Assembly: GCF_006345805.1 (NCBI RefSeq)
Contig: NW_021835038.1
Span: 5,416 to 69,415, forward strand
Length of the DNA: 64,000 bases
Source of the DNA: Octopus sinensis
Taxonomy: Eukaryota
Reading direction: 5' to 3'
Shown: positions 4,515-63,088 of the stretch, piece by piece
Layout: each line of letters opens with the position of its first letter
How positions within the stretch are numbered: position 1 is the stretch's first letter
Program-made: the position numbers and the translations under genes
The notes under the pieces: generated by a model
Databases searched by the model: none
Told to the model about the DNA's origin: nothing
The model's input: only the letters and a program-made list of their open reading frames with translations

Positions 4515-6520
4515 GTAACCACGCTGAAAAGTTTCCCGACCAACCTTGCACGAATAAAAAATTAACTCAAACTTCAACACTACCCAACGGAAAGAGGTTA
4601 ACTGAAAGGATGAGGAATTAACAATTAAAGAAGCCGATAAAGGGAGTGCGGTAGTAGTGATGGACACAGGCTACTACATAACCTAGTATTATCCATGCTG
4701 AATAATGAAGACTACTACGAAAAGATCGAAGACTACAATCCTCAAAGAATAATGACAAGTCTCTCGACATTAGTTCAACTACACGGAAAAGGCCTGACGC
4801 ACAACGAAATAGACTACATAACTAATTTTAAATGTAAGGGCATACCGAAAATTCAAAAAATTCATGAAGCAATTAAAAAATCACGGAAGTCATACAAACA
4901 TATACCAACACCAGGAGACCTTAAACTAAGGCTCATTATAGCCGGACCATCCTGCGAAACGCACCGACTGAGTTACTTAATTGACACCCTCTTGAAACTA
5001 CTTCTAAAATACATTAAATGTTACATTAGAGATGATTTAGACATGTTAAACCACCTCTCAAAAAGAGTAAAGGAAAAACACTTATGGTTTCCTTTGGTAT
5101 TGTAAACCTGTAAACTAATATCTCCCCATAATTATGGATTAGAAGCAACTCAGTTCTGTCTGGAAAAATATCCAGAAGAAATACCAGAACATATTAGCAA
5201 AGAGATCATAACTGAATCATTAAAATTTATTCTCCAGCAAAATCACTTCATTTTTGACACCACTGTATACTGAATGAAATTTGGAGTTTCGATGGGAACC
5301 AACGCAGCCCCCGTTTTGAAAACCTGACAATGGGCTATTTGGAACTAATAGTATATCAGAGGTCACTCACAAAACTCGGAAATCCCCTTTCCCAGTACGT
5401 AAAGGAAAATTGGAAAAGATACTTGGATGACTGTTTCATTCTATGGAATGAGAACATGGCAAAACTTTTGGAATTCAAATGACTTCTCAATAGCATAAAT
5501 ACAAATATACAATTCGGAATGGAATACAACAAAAAGGAACTCCGTTTTCTAGAGACTCTAATAAAAAAAAAGTAATGGAACATAACAAAAAGCAACTCAC
5601 TTTTGTAGATATACTAATCAACAAAGCTAATTTTAAAAAATAGAAACCAACATATTTTACAAAATTGCGAACTCGAAGCAATACTCATTATTTAGCTCAT
5701 GCCATCCGAGACATATTAAAATAAATATCCCATTCAATCTAGCGAGAAGAATCTGCACTATAGTGTCGGAAAAAGACACCAGAGAACTCAGACTACAAGA
5801 ACTTAAAAGCATATTCGTCGACAGACACTACCCAGCTTCGCGTATAGATGATGGGGTAAACATGCTAAAAGAATTGATATACAACCACTAAGAGAGGTCA
5901 AACAAAAAAACACACCACTATAAAGATATTACTTTATATTTTCACATACAACCCCAGAAACAACGAAGCATATAGCACTATTATCCAAACCCTTCCAGTA
6001 CTATATAAGGACCCTAAGCTGTATGAAATTCTACACACCCATAAAATTATTAAGTGTAACAAACAGCCAAATCCACTAAAGCGGATACAAATGCAAAACT
6101 GTACTAAAAAATAACAGAAGCAAGAGTTAAAAAAAAGTGGGCAACCGAACAGTGGAACATGTCCCAACCTAATGGAAGGCTCAGAATTCCGTTTTAAACA
6201 AGGACAAAAATTTAAAATTAAAACTGACTTCACTTGCGCCTCAGAAAATCTCATCTACGTCATATGTTCCGGCTACAGTAGTAACTATATAGGTTCAACA
6301 GGAATGTCCCTAAGACGTACAGCTACACTACACAGACAACAAACTACCACCCCAATACCGTTAAACGCCACTCAGTGGTCATATAGACAGATGTGCTAAG
6401 GAACGCCAACCACAATTTACAACATTCCCACTATACCAATGCACGGAAAGGACCTCAACTCAACAACGACTAAATAAAGAGGCTACATTCATTGAAAAAT
6501 TCAAACCAGAACTTAACATA
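4513..6520 (+). mobile_element. Decayed Penelope-like element (Neptune-like): RT plus GIY-YIG endonuclease, multiply frameshifted
   Basis: ADK-G-SAVVVMD about 4635-4665; GIPKIQK...LRLIIAGPSCETHRLS (ORF 4695..5105); GVSMGTNAAP about 5280-5310; WKRYLDDCFILW about 5412-5447; SCHPRHIKINIPFNLARRICTIVS about 5695-5767; FTCASENLIYVICSGYSSNYIGST (ORF 6172..6399); RLNKEATFIEKFKPELN about 6468-6518. Confidence 0.85.
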
Positions 6521-15619: not shown

Positions 15620-16500
15620 GACATGTGTGGCAAGATAAGATATCCAATGACTAAATCTCAGAAAAAGGATATTTTTCTAGTATCGAAAGCATGTTGATGA
15701 AAATTCAGTGCAGATGGACAGGACATGTTCGAATGAGAAATGACCGCATTCGGAAAATGGTTCTGTAAGACCAACAAGTGGAGGGATACCGCGACAAAGG
15801 AAGACCAGTTCTTAGGTATAAGGATAAGTTGAAGCAATCGTTAAAATCTCAACAGCTTAACATGACATCTTAGAAAATTCATTGCCTAGATTGACCTGCA
15901 ATGGCGTAAAATGACTGACGATGCATCAAACCAATTTGAGTTGAAGAAAAAGAACAATAGAAGAACTATATCAACAGACGCAGGAGTGGCTGTGTGGTAA
16001 GTAGCTTGTTTACCAACCACATGGTTCCGGGTTCAGTTCCACTGCGTGGCACCTTGGGCAGGTGTCTTCTACTATAGCTTCGGGCCGACCAAAGCCCTGT
16101 GAGTGGATTTGGTAGACGGAACTGAAAGAAGCCCGTCGTATATATGTATATATATATATGAGTGTATGTGTGTCTGTGTTTGTCCCCCTAGCATTGCTTG
16201 ACAACCGATGCTGGTGTGTTTATGTCCACGTTACTTAGCGGTTCGGCAAAAGAGACCGATAGAATAAGTACTGGGCTTACAAAAGAATAAGTCCCGGGAT
16301 CGAATTGCTCGATTAAAGGCGGTGCTCCAGCATGGCCGCAGTCAAATGACTGAAACAAGTAAAAGAGTAAAGAGTAAAAGAGAGACACATTTGCCCAATT
16401 CCAGGCTAAATCAAAATTATCAATGTCCCCATTGTGACTTCATAGCAAAATCCATTCCTGGATTGAAATCACATTCACGCAACCATCGCAAACAGATGCA
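15620..16500 (+). mobile_element. RTE-clade LINE 3' fragment interrupted by a SINE A
   Basis: IESMLMKIQCRWTGHVRM...KGRPVLRYKDKLKQSL about 15677-15845; C2H2 finger YQCPHCDFIAKSIPGLKSHSRNH about 16418-16486. Confidence 0.7.
15979..16382 (+). mobile_element. SINE family A, full length
   Basis: A-box-like TGGCTGTGTGG, B-box-like GGTTCAGTTCC, ccttgggcaggtgtc block, gtaaaaga tail repeats. Confidence 0.9.
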
Positions 16501-18867: not shown

Positions 18868-19235
18868 TAATTAATTGATTGTCTGGTTAATTTTTCTGTC
18901 AGTCAATCAGGTAGGCTAATCAATTGACAAATAATAAGAGAAGTTAAACAGAACCAGTGCGTGTGTTCATTATTGGCATAATAACCCTCCCAAGAATCAA
19001 CAAATCGTCATTTATTTAACAGATTAGTCACTTGATTATTTAATTAATTGTTTGGTCAGTCAATTAGGGAGGTTAACCAATTGGCTAATAATAATGAAAG
19101 AAGTGTTTCAAAACCAGTGCGTGTGCTTATAATGAGCATAATGACCCTCCCAAGATTGCCTTTTATTTAACAAATTTATTTATGCATTGTTTGATTATTT
19201 GTTTGGTCAATCAATAAGATAGGCTACTCAATTGT
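18868..19235. repeat. About 2.5 diverged tandem copies of a 150-160-bp unit
   Basis: aaccagtgcgtgtg at about 18952 and 19112; gtttggtca...aattg at about 19050 and 19201; related motif at about 34712. Confidence 0.65.
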
Positions 19236-19305
<70 letters not shown>

Positions 19306-19348
19306 CAACAATAATAACAATAATAATAATTATAATAATAATAATAAT

Positions 19349-21518
19349 GAACAGAAAGGATGTAAACGTGGATCCTACGATTGTAAAGATCAACTACTCA
19401 TCAATAAGATGATCTTAGAAGATTGTCACAAACGACACAAAAACTTATCAATAGCCTGGATAGACTATAAAAAGGCTTTTGATAGCCTACCACATAGCTG
19501 GATTAAGAAATGCCTAGAAATGTATAAGATAGCACCTACTCTGCGAAACTTTTTGCCTGTAAGTATGAGATCACGGAGAACCACACTAACTTTGAACAGT
19601 GACAATGAATCTCTAAATGCTGGTGATGTAAACATTTCATGTGGCATTTTCCAGGGTGACTCACTATCACCACTCCTCTTCTGTTTAGCCTTAGTACCTC
19701 TCTCAAAACCGCTCAATGACGCGCAGTACGAATATAAAATGTTTGATAAAAATATAAATAATCTCATTTACATGGATGATTTAAAGCTCTTTGCAAAAAA
19801 TGACCAACAACTCAAGGGCTTACTAGCGATTGTCAAACAATTCAGTGATGACATCAGAATGCAATTTGGCCTCGATAAATGTGCAAAAGCTACCTTTATC
19901 AAAGGAAAAATGACAGAAACATCTAACGTTAACCTTGACCAGTAGAATGTCATGAAAGAATTAGACCCAGCGGAGAACTACAAGTATCTAAGGATAATTG
20001 AAGGGGACGGAATAAGGCATTCAGAGATGAAGGAAAGGATCAGGAGAGAATGTTATCGCAGAGTAAGAGCAATACTCAAGACAGAGCTGAATGCGAGAAA
20101 CAGGATCGAAGCGATCAACGCATTAGCCATACCAGTCGTGACTTACAGTTTCAATATCGTTAACTGGTCAATTACTGAAATATGTAATCTTGACAGAAAA
20201 ATACGAAAACTGTTGACAATGCATAGAATGCACCACCCTAAGGCAGATACAGAACGACTTTATCTGCCAAGAAACGAGGGAGGCCGTGGACTTTTACAAC
20301 TGGCAATAACAATGAAGATTGCTACAATTGGCCTAGACACCTACCTGAAAAACTCTGAGGACTGGATGTTAAAACTTGTCTCAAAACATGAAAACAAGAA
20401 AGCATCATACTCAGTAACAAAACAGGCAAAGGAATATCTAAGTGAATTCCGAATACAACAAATTTCGGAATTAGAGATAGACATACAAGAAACAAGCACA
20501 GAAAAAGCTAAGCGCATGAAAACCCGTGCTAAAACTGCGGCCTTAGATATTCTGAATGATAAATGGCAAGAAAAACCTCTCTATGGCAAATACTCAAAGA
20601 GAGCGAATAATGCAGATATTGACAAAGCCCTGACCCATCAATGGTTAATGGCCTCTGGCTTAAAATCTGAAACAGAGGGATTTATCATAGCAGCTCAAGA
20701 TCAATGCCTACCAACAAGAAAATACCAGGCCAACATATTAAAGAGCGGCAGTAGCCCAACATGTCGTGTATGTCAGCAACAAAATGAAACCATTGATCAT
20801 GTTGTCTCCAAGTGAAGTCTTCTAGCGCCTACAGAGTATCTCAACAGGCATGATAGAGCTGCACAATATATTCACTGGGTAATCTGCAAAAACCTGGATT
20901 TGCCCCATGAAAAAAACTGGTGGGAACACAAACCACCCCCAGTGCTTGAAAATGACCACATCTCACTCCTCTGGAACTTCACCATTCAAACTGCAGAAAG
21001 ATAGATGCAAATAGGCCAGACATCATATCGAAAGACTTCAAACAAAGAACATGCCTCCTTATTGATATGACTGTCCCAATCGATATAAACGTATCTGTAA
21101 AGACCTACCAAAAATTGAGCAAATATAAAGATCTTGAAATAGAAATCAGCAAAATGTGGAACCTGAAGACTAAAACAATACCTGTTGTCATAGGTGCCCT
21201 GGGAATGATAGCAAAAGGGGCTGATTGCTACCTAACTCAGATACCAAGAAACCCCAAAATGGCAGAAATTCAAAAGATAGTGCGCATGGGAACTGCTCAT
21301 ATCCTACGCAAAATACTTTCTATGTAATCTCAAGGTTTAAAACAAACATAATTTTTTTTTAGACATCCACTAGTACAACACCAAAAACAAAAAAAAAACA
21401 AATATATGGCACACTAGGCATAACAACAACGTGAACTTCCAACCTGTTGTCTCTTGAGGTCTCTGGGTGAGACTTGGAGCCAACTTGTACAAATATAAAG
21501 CAAAAGTCAAACATAGGA
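19349..21518 (+). mobile_element. 5'-truncated R4/Dong-type (RLE) non-LTR retrotransposon, few disabling mutations, flanked by (AAT)n
   Basis: [43 protein letters not shown] and YMDDLKLF (ORF 19232..19945); CRVCQQQNETIDHVV zinc motif (19952..20815); NRPDI and KLSKYKDLE endonuclease motifs (about 21010-21135); stop at 21327; (AAT)n on both sides. Confidence 0.92.
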
Positions 21519-39785: not shown

Positions 39786-40218
39786 GGCGCAGGAGTGGCT
39801 GTGTGGTAAGTAGCTTGCTTACCAACCCACATGGTACTGGGTTCATTCCCACTGCGTGGCACCTTGGGCAAAGTGTCTTCTACTATAGCCTCGGGCCGAC
39901 CAAAGCCTTGTGAGTGGATTTGGTAGATGGAAACTGAAAGAAGCCCGTCGTATATATGTATATATATATGCATGCGTGTGTATATGTTTGTGTGTCTGTG
40001 TTTGTCTCCCCAACATCGCTTGACAACCGATGCTGGTGTGTTTACGTCCCCGTAACTTAGAGGTTCGGCAAAAGACACCGATAGAATAAGTACTAGGCTT
40101 CCAAAAAGTAAGTCCTGGGGTTGATTTGCTCGATTAAAAAGGCGGTGCTCCAGCATGGCCAAAGTCAAATGACTGAAACAAGTAAAAGAGTAAAAGAGAG
40201 TCAAAGAGAGTAAAAGAG
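39786..40218 (+). mobile_element. SINE family A, full length
   Basis: ggcgcaggagtggctgtgtggtaag head through gtaaaagag tail. Confidence 0.9.
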
Positions 40219-44651: not shown

Positions 44652-45047
44652 GGTGCAGGAATGGCTGTGTGGTAAGTAGCTTGCTTACCAACCACATAAT
44701 TCCGGGTTCAGTCCCACTGCGAGGCACCTTGGGCAAGAGTCTTCTACTGTAGCCTCAGGCTGACCAAAGCCTTGTGAGTGGATTTGGTAGACGGAAACTG
44801 AAAGAATCCCATCGTGTATATATATATATGGTTGTATGTATATGTTTGTGTGTCTGTGTTTGTCCCCCCACCATCACTTGACAACTGAAGCTGGTGTGTT
44901 TACGTTCCTGTCACTTAGTGGTTCAGCAAAAGAGACCAATAGAATAAGTACTAGGCTTCCAAAGAATAAGTCCTGGGGTCGATTTGCTCAACTAAAGGCA
45001 GTGCTCCAGCATGGCCGCAGTCAAATGACTGAAACAAATAAAAGAAT
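44652..45047 (+). mobile_element. SINE family A, full length
   Basis: Head to tail match; aactttata / aactttgata TSD-like flanks. Confidence 0.9.
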
Positions 45048-48240: not shown

Positions 48241-48390
48241 AGGTGGAATAGTAGAAGTGTCATTGAATAGTAAGAGGGTGGGGGTCATTATTATATAGAT
48301 ATATGTACAGAGTATTAGAAGTGGTCAGCCTATAAACTTTTGCGTCGACCCTCGCTAGTTGCCTTTCTCTAAGTTCTTGTTGAGATCGAT

Positions 48391-48908
48391 ACTCTTTTAC
48401 TCTTTTACTTGTTTCAGTCATTTGACTGCGGCCATGCTGGAGCACCGCCTTTTAGTCGAGCAAATCGACCCGGGACTTATTCTTTTGTAAGCCCAGTACT
48501 TATTCTATCGGTCTCTTTTACTTGTTTCAGTCATTTGACTGAGGCCATGCTGGAGCACCGCCTTTTAGTCGAGCAAATCGACCCGGGACTTATTCTTTTG
48601 TAAGCCCAGTACTTATTCTATTGGTCTCTTTTGCCAAACCGCTAAGTGACGGGGACGAAAACACACCAGCATCGGTTGTCAAGCAATGCTAGGGGGACAA
48701 ACACAGTCATACAAACATACACACACACACATATATATATACATATATACGACAGGCTTCTTTCAGTTTCCGTCTACCAAATCCACTCACAAGGCATTGG
48801 TCGGCCCCGGGCTATAACAGAAGACACTTGCCCAAGATGCCACGCAGTGGGACTGAACCCGCAACCATGTGGTTGGTTAGCAAGCTACTTACCACACAGC
48901 CACTCCTA
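48391..48908 (-). mobile_element. SINE family A with a 113-bp internal tandem duplication
   Basis: tcttttacttgtttcagtc at 48401 and 48514; head cacacagccactcc ends at about 48907. Confidence 0.9.
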
Positions 48909-49136
48909 CGGAATCATTAAAATAATTATCTGAAATGTATTTAGTTTCGATCAATCGAATATTCATCGCTTCTTGTCAATGTATTGGAATTTTTACAAAC
49001 GCAAATACTTACACATTCTCTCTCAGCCTTTTATTTGTTTCAGTCATATGACTGCAGCCATTTTGAAGCTCCACCGTGTAAGACTAGTTGAATAGATCGA
49101 CGCCAATACTTATTTTCAGCTTAGTACTTATCTATA

Positions 49137-49315
49137 GGGGGCAAAGGAAGTGATTGCGTCACTCATAGCCTCTCCTCTCCAGGTGTAATGATCGCTGCAG
49201 AGAACTTCTACCTGGCTGCGCCTTGCGGAAAGTTCTGCTTATGGCCTCTCCTGCACTACTGTGTCCACAGCAGCACCTTCACGCGGTACCCCTGTTTCTC
49301 ACTGAGCCTGCTGTG
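49137..49315 (+). ncRNA. HDV-like (CPEB3-type) ribozyme candidate
   Basis: P1 GGGGGC 49137-49142 / ACCCCT 49288-49293 (G.U first pair, top mismatch); P2 cacagcag 49266-49273 / ctgctgtg 49308-49315; P3 acc/ggt; L3 TTCACGC; GT after P1; J4/2 CTGA 49302-49305. Confidence 0.6.
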
Positions 49316-49694
49316 TGGCGCGACAGGGTGCTTGGCGGTATAACCGGGTGGGCAGACCGGGCTCGTTAGCCTTGTTGGCAGCCAGTCTAGGAGAAGGAAA
49401 ACTCTGACTCCAAACCCTCGCTCCGCTGCCTTGCGGATGCTCTTGGGAGAGGGAAAGGCTATGGGAGTAAACCCAGACAGAAAATCCGGAGTGGAGCCCC
49501 GAAGGCGGTAGGGTGTCGAATCTCGACCCTTTCCGGCAACTCCTGCAGCCAACCAGACTCCAAACGTACTGCACTGCATTCCTTTGGATTATGTCTGGGG
49601 GGCCGAGAGGGAGATTCTGGTGTCTGGGCAGCCCAGTGTCTTCGTTTTTCTACCGCCCAGGCTGCACCATGGAGAAAACTACTCCATCGATGGA
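49137..49694 (+). mobile_element. 558-bp RTE-derived non-autonomous retroelement with 12-bp TSD
   Basis: acttatctatag at 49126-49137 and 49695-49706; interior ggcagccagtctaggagaaggaaaactctgactccaaacc...gctgccttgcgg resembles RTE 5' UTRs as recalled; no RT coding sequence. Confidence 0.75.
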
Positions 49695-50085
49695 ACTTAT
49701 CTATAGTACTTATTTTCCCGAACCGCTGAGTTACGAGTACATAAACAAACCAACATACACACCTACGCACACACATACACACCCATATGTGTGGATTTTA
49801 CACTGTTTCCGTCTACCATATTTACTCAAAGTGTTTTGCAGGAACGTCTTAACTGCATAGACATGCCTAGTATAATGATATTCTTGGATAACGAAACAGA
49901 GGCGCTTTTCTGTTTTGTTTTGTTTTTCAAGAAACCATATGATACGTCCTTGGTTTTAAGAATACAAACATTTCTGTTAAAAGATTTCAGTAAATTTACC
50001 GATAAATTCTAACAAAGAATAATTATTATAATTATAATTATTATTATTATCATTATTATTATTTTTATTATTATTATTTTTTTTT

Positions 50086-50776
<691 letters not shown>

Positions 50777-51401: not shown

Positions 51402-51884
51402 CATTTTTTTTTTTTGCCATTCGAAAATTCTCAGGCAATACTCAGTTGAAATATACCGATCATGTCGGAATGAACTGTATGCTCAGAAAAGGGATTGTTA
51501 AACACTTGACGTAGTGTCACAGCAATCAATAATTTTGTTTCTTAGTGGAAAAATTCCTTTGCGGGAAAAGCTGAATAATCATAGAAATACAACATTCGGT
51601 TGATTGACAAAAATAGATAACATTAAAAGTTACACATTTACAGCTTCGTTCTGTTCAATAAACTCAAATAAACTCGTATTCAGATGTTCGACTTATGAAC
51701 AGTTTTTTTTTTTTGTTTTTTTTTAATCATATTTTATGGGAAAGAAGCATTAAAAATCAGGTAAACTACGAATAAAAATGATAAATTTGTCGAAAATCTT
51801 ACTTGAAACTTCTCTTCTTTTTTTTACTGATACTTTTATCATTAAAGTCGGGGAAAATGAAACAATAAAATAAAGGTGTGCGCG

Positions 51885-51932
51885 GTGTATATTATATATA
51901 TATATATATATTATATATATGTGTGTTGTGTG

Positions 51933-51963
<31 letters not shown>

Positions 51964-52219
51964 TGGTGTGTTGTACGTTCATTTGTGTGTATATGTATAT
52001 ATATTTATACACATTTATTATCAATTACAAATATATATGTATGTATATATATAGTATATATACATGTACCACAAATTATACGTATATGCTTATAATATAT
52101 ACAGATACACACACAACACACGTATATATATATATATATACAGATATATGTATATGTATGTATATATGTATGTATATATAATATATATATATATACATAT
52201 ATATATATGTATGTATGTA

Positions 52220-52288
<69 letters not shown>

Positions 52289-52384
52289 TATACAGATGTA
52301 TATATATACACAGATATATATATATATATATACAGATATACGTGTATATGTATATATATGTATGGTTCTATGTATGTATGTATG

Positions 52385-52428
<44 letters not shown>

Positions 52429-52450
52429 GTGCGACTGCGTGTGTAATGTA
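51885..52450. repeat. (TA)n/(TG)n compound array
   Basis: Direct reading. Confidence 0.95.
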
Positions 52451-55040: not shown

Positions 55041-55142
55041 TTCTGCTCGACTAAAGGCGGTGCTCCAGCATGGCTACAGTCAAATGACTGAAACAAGTAA
55101 AAGAGTAAAAGAGAGTAAAATATATATATATGTGTGTGTGTT

Positions 55143-55193
<51 letters not shown>

Positions 55194-55687
55194 TGTGTGT
55201 GTGTGTGTGTGTACTCGTAAATGTTTAAACAAGCACACAGTGTGCTCAATTCAATTTGATGACCACGTATCTTTCTCGTATAAATTAATTTGCAATTTTT
55301 TTTTTGCACTTTTACAACAACAACAACAATAATAATAACAACAATAATAAGTGAAACTCAGTGTGATAGCTTCGTTACCATTTTTAGCATTTTCACATGA
55401 ACATTGTTGCAAGTACTGATGTCAGGAGAATTATCTTGTAAAAGAGATTCTTATTAACAAGAATCTGGGAAAAAAAGCCTTTGTAAGTCTCCTCGACAAA
55501 ATGCTGCCTAACTATTACTTAGTTGCATAACCATTTACCATGTCGCTAGATTACAAAGCAGTCATCATGAGAGGCGTGGTCTTTAACCAATTTAACGTAA
55601 AATATGTTCCACATTTCTGGCAAACATTATGTTCTACGAATATAGTTTTATTAATCTTCTCACTTCGTCACCTCGCTTTATTACGCG

Positions 55688-56915
55688 CATACATACATAC
55701 GTACGTGCATATATGCATGCATACATACGTACGTGCATACATACATACATACATACATACATACATACATACATACATACATACATACGTACATACATAC
55801 ATACGTACGTGCATACATGCATGCATACATACATACATACATACATACATACATACATACATACAAGCATTTATACCTACATACATACGTACGTACATAC
55901 ATACATACATACATACATACATACATACATACATACATACATACATACATACGTACATACATACATACATGCATACACACATACATACATACATACATAC
56001 ATACATACGTACGTACGTACGTACGTACGTACATACATACATACATACATACATACATACATACATACATACATACATACATACATACATACATACGTAC
56101 GTGCATACATGCATGCATGCATACATACATACATACATACATACATACATACATACATACATACATACATACATGCATACATGCATACATACATATGTAC
56201 ATGCATACATGCATGCATACATACATACATACATACATACATACATACATACATACGTACGTACGTACGTACATACATACATACATACATACATACGTAC
56301 GTACGTACGTACGTACATACATACATACATACGTACACACATACATACATACATACATTTGTACATACATACATACATACATACACACATACATACATAC
56401 ATACATACATACGTACGTACATACATACATACATACATACGTACATACATACATACATACAAGCATTTATACCTACATGCGTACATACATACATGCATGC
56501 ATGTAATTTATATACATACATATGTAATGCATACACACATATACACACATACACAAGAATATAAATATAAAACGTAAATAATACATAAATGCATATTCAC
56601 AAAATTAAACGTACATAGATATATTCATACATATATGCATACATATATATGTATACATGTACACACACACACACATACACTTATGTATGTATATTTCAAT
56701 ACATACATAGATATATATACATATATACATACACATAAATACATTTGTATATTTATTCATATATATACATTCGTACATACAGACATACATACATACATAC
56801 ATATACACACATACACATATATATATATACATATACATGCATACATATACATACATACATGTATACATACATATACATGCATACATCCTACATTCATACA
56901 TACATACACATAGAC

Positions 56916-62725: not shown

Positions 62726-63088
62726 CTCTTTTACTCTTTTTACTCGTTTCAGTCATTTGACTGCGGCCATGCTGGAGCACCGCCTTTTTAGTCGATCAAA
62801 TCGACCCCAGGACTTATTCGCTGTAAGCCTAGTACTTATTCTATCGGTCTCTTTTGCCGAACCGCTAAGTTACGGGGACGTAAACACACCAGCATCGGTT
62901 GTCAAGCGATATTGGGGGGACAAACACAGACACACAGACACACAAACACACACACACATACCACACACACACACACACACATATACGACGGGCTTCTTTC
63001 AGTTTTCCGTCTACCAAATCCACTCACAAGGCTTTGGTCGGCGCGAGGCTATAGTAGAAGGTGCCACGCAGTGGGACTGAACCCGAAA
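62726..63088 (-). mobile_element. SINE family A
   Basis: tcgtttcagtcatttgactgcggccatgctggagcaccgcc to gtgggactgaacccg. Confidence 0.9.

What the first reader, a model, noticed from the sequence alone, without database searches (positions are those of the whole stretch)
49137..49315. CPEB3/HDV-like ribozyme fold whose cleavage site marks the exact 5' end of a mobile RTE-derived element
Seen: all HDV-fold elements in the correct order. These are P1 GGGGG/CCCCT with a G.U first pair and a C/A mismatch on top, an 8-bp P2, P3 acc/ggt, L3 TTCACGC, G-T after P1, a very short P4 and a C-N-R-A J4/2 (CTGA), with about 120 nt of hairpin-rich J1/2. G1 is at 49137, the boundary of the 12-bp TSD. Established: RTE-clade retrotransposons carry 5' HDV-like ribozymes, and human CPEB3 has L3 UUCACGU with a single-pair P1.1. 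Inference: self-cleavage liberated this element's 5' end from a read-through transcript. P1 is one pair shorter than canonical, so this copy may be impaired.
Basis: partly seen in the sequence, partly recalled or inferred. Interest (0 to 1): 0.8.

Follow-up and report, generated by a model that had tools for sequence, protein, structure and literature searches.

The report
Self-cleaving ribozyme heading a jumping element
A 558-base mobile-element insertion begins exactly at the predicted cut site of an HDV-like self-cleaving RNA fold that is kept, with compensating base changes, in related retrotransposons from other animals; this is a new example of a known way for such elements to trim their own 5' end.

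Summary
Window 49137-49315 (+) has every HDV-like element in the right order: a 5-bp P1 with a G.U first pair, a 124-nt J1/2, an 8-bp P2, a 3-bp P3, L3 UUCACGC, G in J1/4, 7 nt in place of P4, and J4/2 CUGAGC. G1 is the first base of a 558-bp insertion (49137-49694). The insertion sits in a SINE copy and is flanked by an 11-bp perfect repeat; the joined flanks align without a gap to four intact SINE copies.

A motif this good is expected 0.03 times per shuffled window and occurred at position 1 in 0 of 3000 element shuffles. Four relatives from metagenome contigs keep the fold. P2 carries compensatory changes at 6 of 10 pairs. Three relatives have TSD-defined 5' ends at the same G-run.

In those relatives the sequence is the 5' UTR of an APE-endonuclease plus RT LINE. 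A sister lineage gives sub-threshold Rfam hits to drz-agam ribozymes.

Not shown: RTE membership, kinship with CPEB3 (no Rfam hit), catalysis, or other copies in this genome. Two decayed relatives have U at the catalytic C. Verdict: a genuine HDV-like ribozyme of the P4-less, long-J1/2 type; a new member of a known kind.

The parts
49126..49136 (+). 5' copy of the target-site duplication, ACTTATCTATA
   Evidence: Identical 11-mer at 49695-49705. The joined flanks align without a gap to four intact copies of the host SINE.
49137..49694 (+). Inserted 558-bp non-coding element. It corresponds to the first ~560 nt of the 5' UTR of an APE-type LINE family. It has no poly(A), no long ORF, and 57% GC in a ~36% GC window.
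   Evidence: It is 68-72% identical over ~440-520 nt to L004-L007. There the same sequence precedes an endonuclease/RT ORF.
49137..49315 (+). HDV-like ribozyme fold, from P1 through the 3' strand of P2
   Evidence: Direct reading. The only medium-stringency motif in the window. Covariation in relatives.
49137..49141 (+). P1 5' strand, GGGGG. The predicted cleavage is 5' of G49137.
   Evidence: Pairs with 49289-49293 CCCCU. The G-run and C-run are invariant in 5 sequences. RNAalifold recovers the helix unprompted, shifted by one nt.
49142..49265 (+). J1/2 insertion of 124 nt
   Evidence: Partly alignable to relatives, which carry ~45 extra nt after the G-run. Not unusually stable. The motif AUAGCCUCUCC is shared with L005, L009 and the Rfam drz-agam-2-2 consensus.
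49266..49273 (+). P2 5' strand, CACAGCAG
   Evidence: 8 Watson-Crick pairs with 49308-49315. In relatives the sequence is CCTGCGGCAA/TTGCCGCAGG (L004) and TAGCAA/TTGCTA (L005), in the same register. 6 of 10 pairs have changes on both sides.
49275..49287 (+). P3 (ACC/GGT) enclosing L3 (TTCACGC)
   Evidence: L004 and L006 keep ACC/GGT, and L007 has GGA (one broken pair). L005 reads GCG/CGC with a longer L3. L3 C49280 with G49294 (P1.1) is C-G in 5 of 5.
49289..49294 (+). P1 3' strand CCCCU, plus the J1/4 G
49295..49301 (+). 7 nt (TTTCTCA) where P4 would be; no helix is possible
   Evidence: Relatives L004-L007 have 8 nt here. The sister lineage L008-L010 has a 7-bp P4. P4-less active ribozymes are published (PMC3774820, PMC10879173).
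49302..49307 (+). J4/2, CTGAGC, with the candidate catalytic C49302
   Evidence: C-N-R-A is present in the window, L004 (CTAA), L005 (CAGA), L008 (CTGA) and L009 (CTAA). It is T in L006 and L007.
49308..49315 (+). P2 3' strand, CTGCTGTG
49417..49618 (+). Conserved, structured 5' UTR module. The near-invariant core AAAGGCTATGGGAGTAAACCCAGACAGAAAATCCGGAGTGGAGCC lies at 49454-49498.
   Evidence: Found in 17 fetched loci. RNAalifold on 13 sequences gives 35 pairs, 16 of them with compensatory changes.
49669..49694 (+). Short upstream-ORF start (ATG in caccATGG context) and the terminal palindrome TCCATCGATGGA (49683-49694) that ends the element
   Evidence: Homologous to ATGGAGAGTGTCACTCCATAG in L004, where ~270 nt more UTR follow before the endonuclease ORF. 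L002 has a CCATCG...GGATGG hairpin at the same place.
49695..49705 (+). 3' copy of the target-site duplication
49029..49757 (+). Host SINE copy split by the insertion (about 49029-49136 and 49706-49757)
   Evidence: Self-BLAST and alignment to copies at 62738-62895, 16208-16365, 44936-45044 and 40078-40199.

Best explanation
The 558-bp insert is a short, non-coding derivative of a non-LTR retrotransposon (LINE). Its first 179 nt encode an HDV-like self-cleaving ribozyme of the P4-less, long-J1/2 type.

Proposed mechanism. The element has no recognisable promoter of its own and is transcribed as part of a longer host transcript. The ribozyme folds into its nested double pseudoknot and C49302 catalyses cleavage of the bond 5' of G49137. 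This releases an RNA whose first base is G1. That RNA is copied into a new site by target-primed reverse transcription, using a LINE endonuclease/RT supplied in trans. The result is the 11-bp target-site duplication and a 5' junction that starts exactly at G1.

Shown here: the fold, its conservation and covariation in relatives, the coincidence of G1 with the insertion boundary here and in three relatives, and the LINE origin of the sequence.

Inferred: read-through transcription, catalytic activity of this copy, and the identity of the partner LINE.
For: 1. All fold elements are present in the correct order at the stated coordinates.
2. It is the only medium-stringency motif in the window, against 0.033 expected. 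It falls at position 1 in 0 of 3000 composition-matched shuffles.
3. The insertion boundaries are proven by the 11-bp repeat and the empty-site alignment.
4. Relatives L004-L007 are 68-72% identical and keep the fold. 87% of cells are paired against 38-53% when partners are slid. Eight pairs have changes on both sides, against 0-2 when slid and 0 of 500 shuffles reaching that number. P2 has 6 of 10 compensatory pairs, and P1.1 is C-G in 5 of 5.
5. RNAalifold, given nothing, recovers P1 and P3.
6. Independent 5' ends lie at the G-run. L007 is a 4024-bp LINE with a 12/12 TSD. L004 has a 10/11 TSD. L014 has an 8-bp TSD within 3 nt of the G-run.
7. In L004, L007 and L009 the same 5' region precedes an Exo_endo_phos plus RVT_1 ORF.
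8. The sister lineage L008/L009 shares the 5' UTR module and has an HDV-like core with a real P4. It scores E = 0.0018 to RF01788 and E = 0.02 to RF01787.
9. Published active ribozymes share each oddity. There are examples with no P4 and a J1/2 of 216-498 nt, one with a 4-nt P1, and cleavage at the element 5' end is reported for R2, R4/Dong, L1Tc and RTE (PMC3774820, PMC6765202).
Against: - No Rfam family matches the window copy or L004, even at E <= 10.
- P1 has only 5 pairs, and it never varies among relatives, so P1 itself has no covariation support.
- The J1/2 of the window copy is no more stable than shuffles. Long, weakly structured linkers slow HDV-like ribozymes (PMC4908430).
- Two of four relatives (L006, L007) have T at the catalytic position, yet L007 still has a precise G-run 5' end. 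These copies are old (76-88% identical to each other, with broken ORFs), so decay after insertion is plausible but not proven.
- Only five sequences support the covariation, three of them from one sample, and the tested structure was derived from the window sequence.
- No second copy from the window's own genome could be obtained.
- The element ends inside what is 5' UTR in the full-length LINEs, so its 3'-end recognition is unexplained.
Confidence: 0.75

Rival explanations
1. The fold is conserved but no longer, or never, cleaves. The G-run 5' end would be set by transcription initiation from an internal promoter. The pseudoknotted structure would serve another role, such as translation initiation or binding of the element's protein.
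For: L006 and L007 carry T at the catalytic position, and L007 still has a precise TSD-defined G-run 5' end. There is no Rfam hit. HDV-like ribozymes of retrotransposons have been proposed to act like IRES elements (PMC6765202). A strongly conserved, structured module follows the fold.
Against: The catalytic C and the C-N-R-A context are kept in the window, L004, L005, L008 and L009. G1.U, P1.1 and the L3 U...C...G pattern are exactly the catalytic-core features, not just helices. L006 and L007 are old, decayed copies. A non-catalytic role does not exclude cleavage.
Confidence: 0.14
2. The fit is a chance resemblance, found by fitting a permissive fold to the start of a GC-rich insert.
For: The lenient descriptor matches about 38 sites per shuffled window. 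P1 is short, P4 is absent and J1/2 is long, so the descriptor had to be relaxed. Rfam is silent.
Against: At medium stringency 0.033 are expected per window, and 0 of 3000 shuffles place the motif at position 1. There are compensatory changes in P2 and P3 across relatives. The core is conserved in lineages that share only ~70% identity. A sister lineage is recognised by Rfam drz-agam models.
Confidence: 0.03
3. The sequence is a relative or ancestor-like copy of the mammalian CPEB3 intronic ribozyme, rather than a retrotransposon ribozyme.
Against: There is no hit to the Rfam CPEB3 model at E <= 10, even on a 71-nt query. It lies inside a TSD-flanked insertion. The P2 sequence is entirely different in the closest relatives, so that identity is not inherited. 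Convergence of HDV-like active-site sequences is documented (PMC3774820).
Confidence: 0.03

Closest known systems
[quoted passage not shown]
   Same: The fold sits at the extreme 5' end, and the predicted cleavage site equals the element's first base. The element has no evident promoter, and the 5' junction is flanked by a TSD (PMC3774820, PMC6765202).
   Different: The parent here is a LINE family whose clade I could not determine. Rfam models do not detect this variant. The insert is a 558-bp piece containing only 5' UTR sequence, not a full element.
Silkmoth R2 ribozymes and minimal (P4-less) HDV-like ribozymes
   Same: There is no P4 stem and a very long J1/2. In the silkmoth R2 ribozymes, activity depended on the catalytic C (PMC3774820). 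An abalone HDV-like ribozyme with 5 nt in place of P4 is cited in that paper. Minimal drz lack P4 (PMC10879173).
   Different: R2 is specific to the 28S rDNA site and uses a restriction-like endonuclease. This family inserts at varied sites and uses an APE endonuclease. Minimal drz have short J1/2 strands.
Anopheles gambiae drz-Agam-1 / drz-Agam-2 (Rfam RF01787, RF01788)
   Same: The sister lineage L008/L009 aligns over the full models. It shares ACCUCCUCGUGGU, the J4/2 CUAA and the J1/2 motif AUAGxCUCUCC. The window also has AUAGCCUCUCC in its J1/2. Agam-2 has a large structured J1/2 (PMC4908430).
   Different: Scores are below the gathering thresholds (24.6-27 bits against 37-38). The window copy and L004 give no hit. 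Agam-2 has a P4 and a 12-bp P2.
NARTc / L1Tc of Trypanosoma cruzi
   Same: A truncated non-autonomous element shares the ribozyme-bearing 5' end of its autonomous LINE (PMC3383444, PMC5814959).
   Different: There the ribozyme overlaps an internal promoter (Pr77), and the clade (ingi) and host are different. Here no promoter function is known.
Mammalian CPEB3 ribozyme
   Different: No Rfam CPEB3 hit. It is not in a CPEB3 intron, has no P4 and has a 124-nt J1/2. The resemblance is best explained by convergence.

Membership tests
HDV-like self-cleaving ribozyme (fold family) | Nested double-pseudoknot order: P1, J1/2, P2, P3, L3, P3', P1', J1/4, (P4), J4/2, P2' | tested here: met
   Direct reading and descriptor scan.
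HDV-like self-cleaving ribozyme (fold family) | Cleavage-site G1 forming a G.U wobble at the base of P1 | tested here: met
   G49137.U49293. The pair is G.U in 4 of 5 sequences and G-C in one.
HDV-like self-cleaving ribozyme (fold family) | P1 of about 6-7 bp | tested here: inconclusive
   5 bp plus a C x A mismatch here; 5-6 bp in relatives. The literature reports 1-2 mismatches at the top of P1 in a quarter of R2 ribozymes, and an active ribozyme with a 4-nt P1 (PMC3774820).
HDV-like self-cleaving ribozyme (fold family) | P1.1 between an L3 C and the J1/4 G, and an L3 with a 5' U and an internal G | tested here: met
   C49280-G49294 is C-G in 5 of 5. L3 is UUCACGC here and UUCAAGU in L004, L006 and L007. 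L005 lacks the G.
HDV-like self-cleaving ribozyme (fold family) | Catalytic C in J4/2 (C-N-R-A) | tested here: met
   C49302-TGA. C is kept in L004, L005, L008 and L009. It is T in the decayed copies L006 and L007.
HDV-like self-cleaving ribozyme (fold family) | P4 helix | tested here: not met
   Only 7 nt (49295-49301). P4 is dispensable, and natural P4-less members are known (PMC3774820, PMC10879173), so this is not disqualifying.
HDV-like self-cleaving ribozyme (fold family) | Helices supported by compensatory substitutions among homologues | tested here: met
   P2 has 6 of 10 pairs and P3 has 2 of 3 pairs with changes on both sides. 0 of 500 shuffles reach the observed counts, and slid controls give 0-2 pairs. 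P1 is invariant and so uninformative. Only five sequences were available.
HDV-like self-cleaving ribozyme (fold family) | Match to a curated covariance model (Rfam HDV, CPEB3, drz-agam and others) | tested here: not met
   No hit for the window at gathering score or at E <= 10, nor for L004. The sister lineage L008/L009 scores E = 0.0018-0.03, below the gathering scores.
HDV-like self-cleaving ribozyme (fold family) | Divalent-metal-dependent self-scission giving a 5'-OH product | not testable with these tools
   Needs an in vitro co-transcriptional cleavage assay.
CPEB3 ribozyme (Rfam RF00622) | Match to the family model, and location in a CPEB3 intron of a mammal | tested here: not met
   No match at E <= 10 on 701-nt and 71-nt queries. 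The sequence lies inside a TSD-flanked insertion in a SINE.
RTE-clade LINE derivative | Autonomous relatives encode APE endonuclease plus RT in one ORF, without ORF1 | tested here: met
   The L009 ORF of 698 aa has Exo_endo_phos at 16-186 and RVT_1 at 540-693, directly after the ~900-nt UTR. L004 and L007 are alike. This is not specific to RTE.
RTE-clade LINE derivative | The RT domain groups with RTE in a phylogeny with labelled references | not tested
   No labelled LINE reference set was on hand. Comparison with sequences recalled from memory was inconclusive.
RTE-clade LINE derivative | The 3' end is shared with a partner RTE of the same genome | not testable with these tools
   No copy of the parent LINE is in the window (tblastn), and the source genome was not searchable.
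Ribozyme-headed non-autonomous LINE derivative (NARTc-like) | Shares the ribozyme-bearing 5' end of an autonomous LINE, lacks ORFs and is flanked by a TSD | tested here: met
   Short relatives at three different loci exist in Tara contigs L015-L017, but without a recognisable ribozyme.

The most novel reading that the evidence does not exclude
The ribozyme plus the deeply conserved, structured 5' UTR module may form a self-sufficient 'head'. With only a ~12-nt terminal hairpin as a tail, that head would be enough for trans-mobilisation. This would define a class of SINE-like elements that carry a ribozyme head, lack a promoter and are built entirely from LINE 5' UTR sequence. The class would be present in several animal lineages: the window copy, L002, and Tara L015-L017.
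Probability: 0.2. Interest if true: 0.6.

Novelty: new member of a known kind. Interest (0 to 1): 0.42.

Why it matters
It adds a well-supported, Rfam-invisible variant to the known set of retrotransposon HDV-like ribozymes: no P4, a 124-150-nt J1/2 and a 5-6-bp G/C P1. This shows that curated models miss such variants.

It gives an exact 5' boundary for annotating this LINE family and its short derivatives in a repeat-rich, probably cephalopod, genome. The cephalopod origin is my impression from the SINE and was not tested.

It also exposes a strongly conserved, covarying RNA domain in the 5' UTR of the same LINE group. The function of that domain is unknown and could be tested for translation, protein binding or promoter activity.

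It does not change the picture of how these elements work.

Tried and rejected
- Rfam at gathering score and at E <= 10 on the window region and on L004: nothing.
- ARAGORN for a tRNA-derived SINE head: nothing.
- Self-BLAST for other copies in the window: none; only the host SINE repeats.
- Protein-trick searches with ORFs of the element. The first gave 2 distant hits and the plus-frame query gave none. Only the profile of four sequences opened the family.
- DNA-pattern scans: viral contigs gave 0 and metagenome contigs gave 1 locus, L003.
- First relatives L001-L003 share only the 3' half and show no HDV motif upstream. I first took this as evidence against conservation. It turned out that they are truncated, rearranged or different lineages.
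- A 12-nt repeat in L003 (1522/2376) was rejected as a TSD, because the LINE reading frame runs through it.
- LINE clade. Pfam and PDB give only generic RT and endonuclease hits, and the cluster look-up gave no names.
- Literature search for the core sequence string: nothing. The search for drz-Agam and RTE gave nothing useful, and Ruminski et al. 2011 is not held.
- J1/2 stability: z = 0.07.

Full report
**1. What is in the sequence**

- P1 is G49137-G49141 with C49289-U49293. The first pair is G.U, followed by four G-C pairs, with C49142 x A49288 unpaired on top.
- J1/2 is 49142-49265 (124 nt).
- P2 is CACAGCAG (49266-73) with CTGCTGTG (49308-15), eight Watson-Crick pairs.
- P3 is ACC (49275-77) with GGT (49285-87).
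- L3 is TTCACGC.
- G49294 can pair with C49280 to form P1.1.
- Seven nucleotides (49295-49301) stand where P4 would be.
- J4/2 is C49302-TGAGC.

**2. The insertion**

The flanks of 49137-49694 belong to a SINE that has several other copies in the window. The 11-mer ACTTATCTATA occurs at 49126-36 and again at 49695-705. A twelfth position mismatches (T against A). Joining the flanks with one copy of the repeat gives a sequence that aligns without a gap at the junction to four intact SINE copies. The insert is therefore 558 bp, and G49137 is its first base. It is 57% GC in a window of about 36% GC. It has no long ORF, no poly(A) and no tRNA-like head.

**3. Chance**

I wrote a descriptor for the fold and scanned both strands of the window and dinucleotide shuffles.
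- The very lenient version is common: 59 sites in the window against 38 +/- 8 in shuffles.
- At medium stringency (at least 3 G-C pairs in P1, at least 2 G/C in P3, P2 of at least 7 bp) the window has one site, this one, against 0.033 per shuffle.
- A stricter version gives one site against none in 30 shuffles.
- The insert is GC-rich, so I also shuffled the insert alone 3000 times. A medium-stringency motif appeared anywhere in 53 shuffles and at position 1 in none. A lenient motif appeared at position 1 in 7.

**4. Curated models**

Rfam gives nothing for the window at gathering scores. It also gives nothing at E <= 10 on 701-nt and 71-nt queries. Membership in the CPEB3 or HDV Rfam families is therefore not met. 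The 124-nt J1/2 and the missing P4 are obvious reasons why those models would fail.

**5. Finding relatives**

No other copy is in the window. Searching the protein collection with a spurious minus-strand ORF of the element gave two distant hits. A plus-frame query gave none. A pattern scan of metagenome contigs gave one locus.

These first three relatives (L001-L003) share only the 3' half of the element, which includes a nearly invariant ~45-nt core. A profile of the four minus-frame translations then returned 50 proteins. Their contigs gave 14 further loci.

**6. Relatives that keep the ribozyme**

L004, L005, L006 and L007 align to the window element over 440-520 nt at 68-72% identity. All four contain the core.

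L004 reads P2 CCTGCGGCAA/TTGCCGCAGG, P3 ACC/GGT, L3 TTCAAGT, P1' CCCCCT followed by G, 8 nt in place of P4, and J4/2 CTAAGT. It passes the descriptor with a 6-bp P1 and a 10-bp P2.

I cut out J1/2 and aligned the first 6 nt plus the core of the five sequences. I then counted pairs for P1, P2, P3 and P1.1.
- 87% of cells are paired, against 38-53% when the 3' partners are slid by 1-3 columns.
- Eight pairs have changes on both sides, against 0-2 when slid and a shuffle mean of 3.5. None of 500 shuffles reaches eight.
- P2 has compensatory changes at 6 of 10 pairs and P3 at 2 of 3.
- P1 is an invariant G-run/C-run, so it is uninformative.
- P1.1 is C-G in all five sequences.

RNAalifold was run on the five natural full-length sequences with no structure given. 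It predicts P1 (shifted by one nucleotide, G-C instead of G.U), P3 and several J1/2 helices. It cannot predict the pseudoknotted P2.

Caveats: there are only five sequences, three come from one sample, and the tested structure was derived from the window copy.

**7. Family 5' ends**

In all relatives the homology starts at a G-run that abuts unrelated flanking DNA.
- L007 is a 4024-bp element flanked by a perfect 12-bp duplication, ATAATACAATAT. It begins GGGGGGGTGC.
- L004 is flanked by AACATGTTTAC and AACATGTATAC.
- L014 has an 8-bp duplication ending 3 nt before the G-run.

The relatives have about 45 nt after the G-run that the window copy lacks. The window lineage kept the G-run while J1/2 changed.

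**8. What the element derives from**

In L004 the ribozyme and the conserved module are followed by about 270 nt more of untranslated sequence. Then comes an ORF beginning MKMPALRIASWNVRTMC, which is an Exo_endo_phos endonuclease, followed by RT fragments.

L009 has an intact 698-aa ORF with Exo_endo_phos (16-186) and RVT_1 (540-693) after a ~900-nt UTR. Its best PDB matches are LINE-1 ORF2p and R2 proteins. L003 carries the same C-terminal region as L004 and is an internally deleted copy.

No ORF1 is visible. The window insert thus corresponds to the first ~560 nt of this LINE group's 5' UTR. It ends in a palindrome, TCCATCGATGGA. L002 has a CCATCG...GGATGG hairpin at the same place.

Three Tara contigs (L015-L017) carry a ~530-nt short relative at different loci, without a recognisable ribozyme. 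How a 5'-UTR-only RNA is recognised at its 3' end is not explained.

**9. RTE or not**

An APE endonuclease plus RT without ORF1 fits RTE, but also fits other clades. I had no labelled reference set. Pfam, PDB and the cluster look-up give only generic answers.

One indirect hint remains. The sister lineage L008/L009 shares the 5' UTR module and has an HDV-like core with a 7-bp P4. It matches Rfam drz-agam-2-2 (24.6 bits, E = 0.0018) and drz-agam-1 (27 bits, E = 0.02), both below the gathering scores. The match includes primary-sequence similarity in J1/2, and the motif AUAGCCUCUCC is also in the window. I recall drz-Agam-2 as RTE-associated, but the paper is not held. The RTE claim stays open.

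**10. Points against**

- L006 and L007 have T at the catalytic position. The tree of the three same-sample copies does not say whether this happened once or twice. The copies are 76-88% identical to each other and have broken ORFs, so decay after insertion is plausible.
- The window's J1/2 is not unusually stable. Long, weakly structured J1/2 linkers slow such ribozymes (PMC4908430).
- P1 has 5 pairs. However, R2 ribozymes often have mismatches at the top of P1, and one with a 4-nt P1 is active (PMC3774820). The same paper documents active P4-less ribozymes with a J1/2 of 216-498 nt, and convergence of active-site sequences. That convergence is the likeliest reason for the CPEB3-like L3.

**11. 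Verdict**

This is a genuine HDV-like ribozyme at the 5' end of a LINE-derived, TSD-flanked insert, and a new member of a known kind. Catalysis, the read-through transcription model and the RTE label remain to be tested.

The most interesting by-product is the 5' UTR module at 49417-49618. It is nearly invariant in its core across loci from marine, freshwater and other samples. It folds into a consensus structure in which 16 of 35 pairs show compensatory changes.

Noticed in passing
window 49417-49618 (core 49454-49498): A structured RNA module in the LINE 5' UTR. Its ~45-nt core is nearly invariant across 17 loci from marine, freshwater and other assemblies. RNAalifold on 13 sequences gives 35 pairs, 16 with compensatory changes. 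Its function is unknown.
   Followed up: partly
L008 1527-1669, L009 2801-2943, L010 (minus strands): A sister LINE lineage with the same 5' UTR module carries an HDV-like core that has a 7-bp P4 (CTGGAGC/GCTCCAG) and L3 UCCYCGU. It gives sub-threshold Rfam hits to drz-agam-2-2 (E = 0.0018) and drz-agam-1 (E = 0.02). Its P1 5' strand pairs over only 4 bp (GUCU), and its 5' end could not be defined.
   Followed up: partly
L007 2686-6709 (minus strand): A 4024-bp LINE copy with a perfect 12-bp TSD (ATAATACAATAT). Its 3' end is ...TTGTCTTTCGAGACAGGGAGACCTATATAAA, with a UUCG-loop hairpin. Its ORFs are broken in many places.
   Followed up: partly
L015, L016, L017 (Tara Oceans contigs, minus strands): A ~530-nt short relative of the element sits at three loci with different flanks. 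It starts ATGCAGGTATATGAATA and ends with a GATCTCTTGAGATC hairpin plus GAAGGAGCCAACAA. No G-run and no HDV-like motif are seen at its 5' end.
   Followed up: partly
L014 about 6150-6423 (minus strand): This copy starts at the G-run, but a deletion removes the whole ribozyme core from P2 onwards. It also has a local duplication inside the conserved core.
   Followed up: no
window 49029-49136 and 49706-49757; 62738-62895; 16208-16365; 44936-45044; 40078-40199; also about 353-414, 48389-48562, 55056-55220: An abundant SINE family (consensus ...GTTTCAGTCATTTGACTGCGGCCATGCTGGAGCACCGCC...) that hosts the insertion. It looks like a cephalopod SINE to me, but this was not tested.
   Followed up: partly
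window 48800-48910: A second, different SINE-like repeat (...GGGACTGAACCCGCAACCATGTGGTTGG...) lies just upstream of the host SINE.
   Followed up: no
window 19232-20815 (+): A LINE fragment with an RT domain (RVT_1, E = 1.9e-20; weak zf-RVT). tblastn with the L009 ORF finds nothing in the window at E <= 0.01, so this fragment is at most distantly related to the ribozyme-bearing LINE family.
   Followed up: partly
window about 50090-50340 and 50450-50700: A tandem duplication of a ~360-bp unit, each copy ending in a long (ATT)n microsatellite.
   Followed up: no
window 51880-52440 and 55540-56580: Long TA/TG-rich and CATA/TACA-type microsatellite blocks. They create the longest, spurious ORFs of the region.
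   Followed up: no
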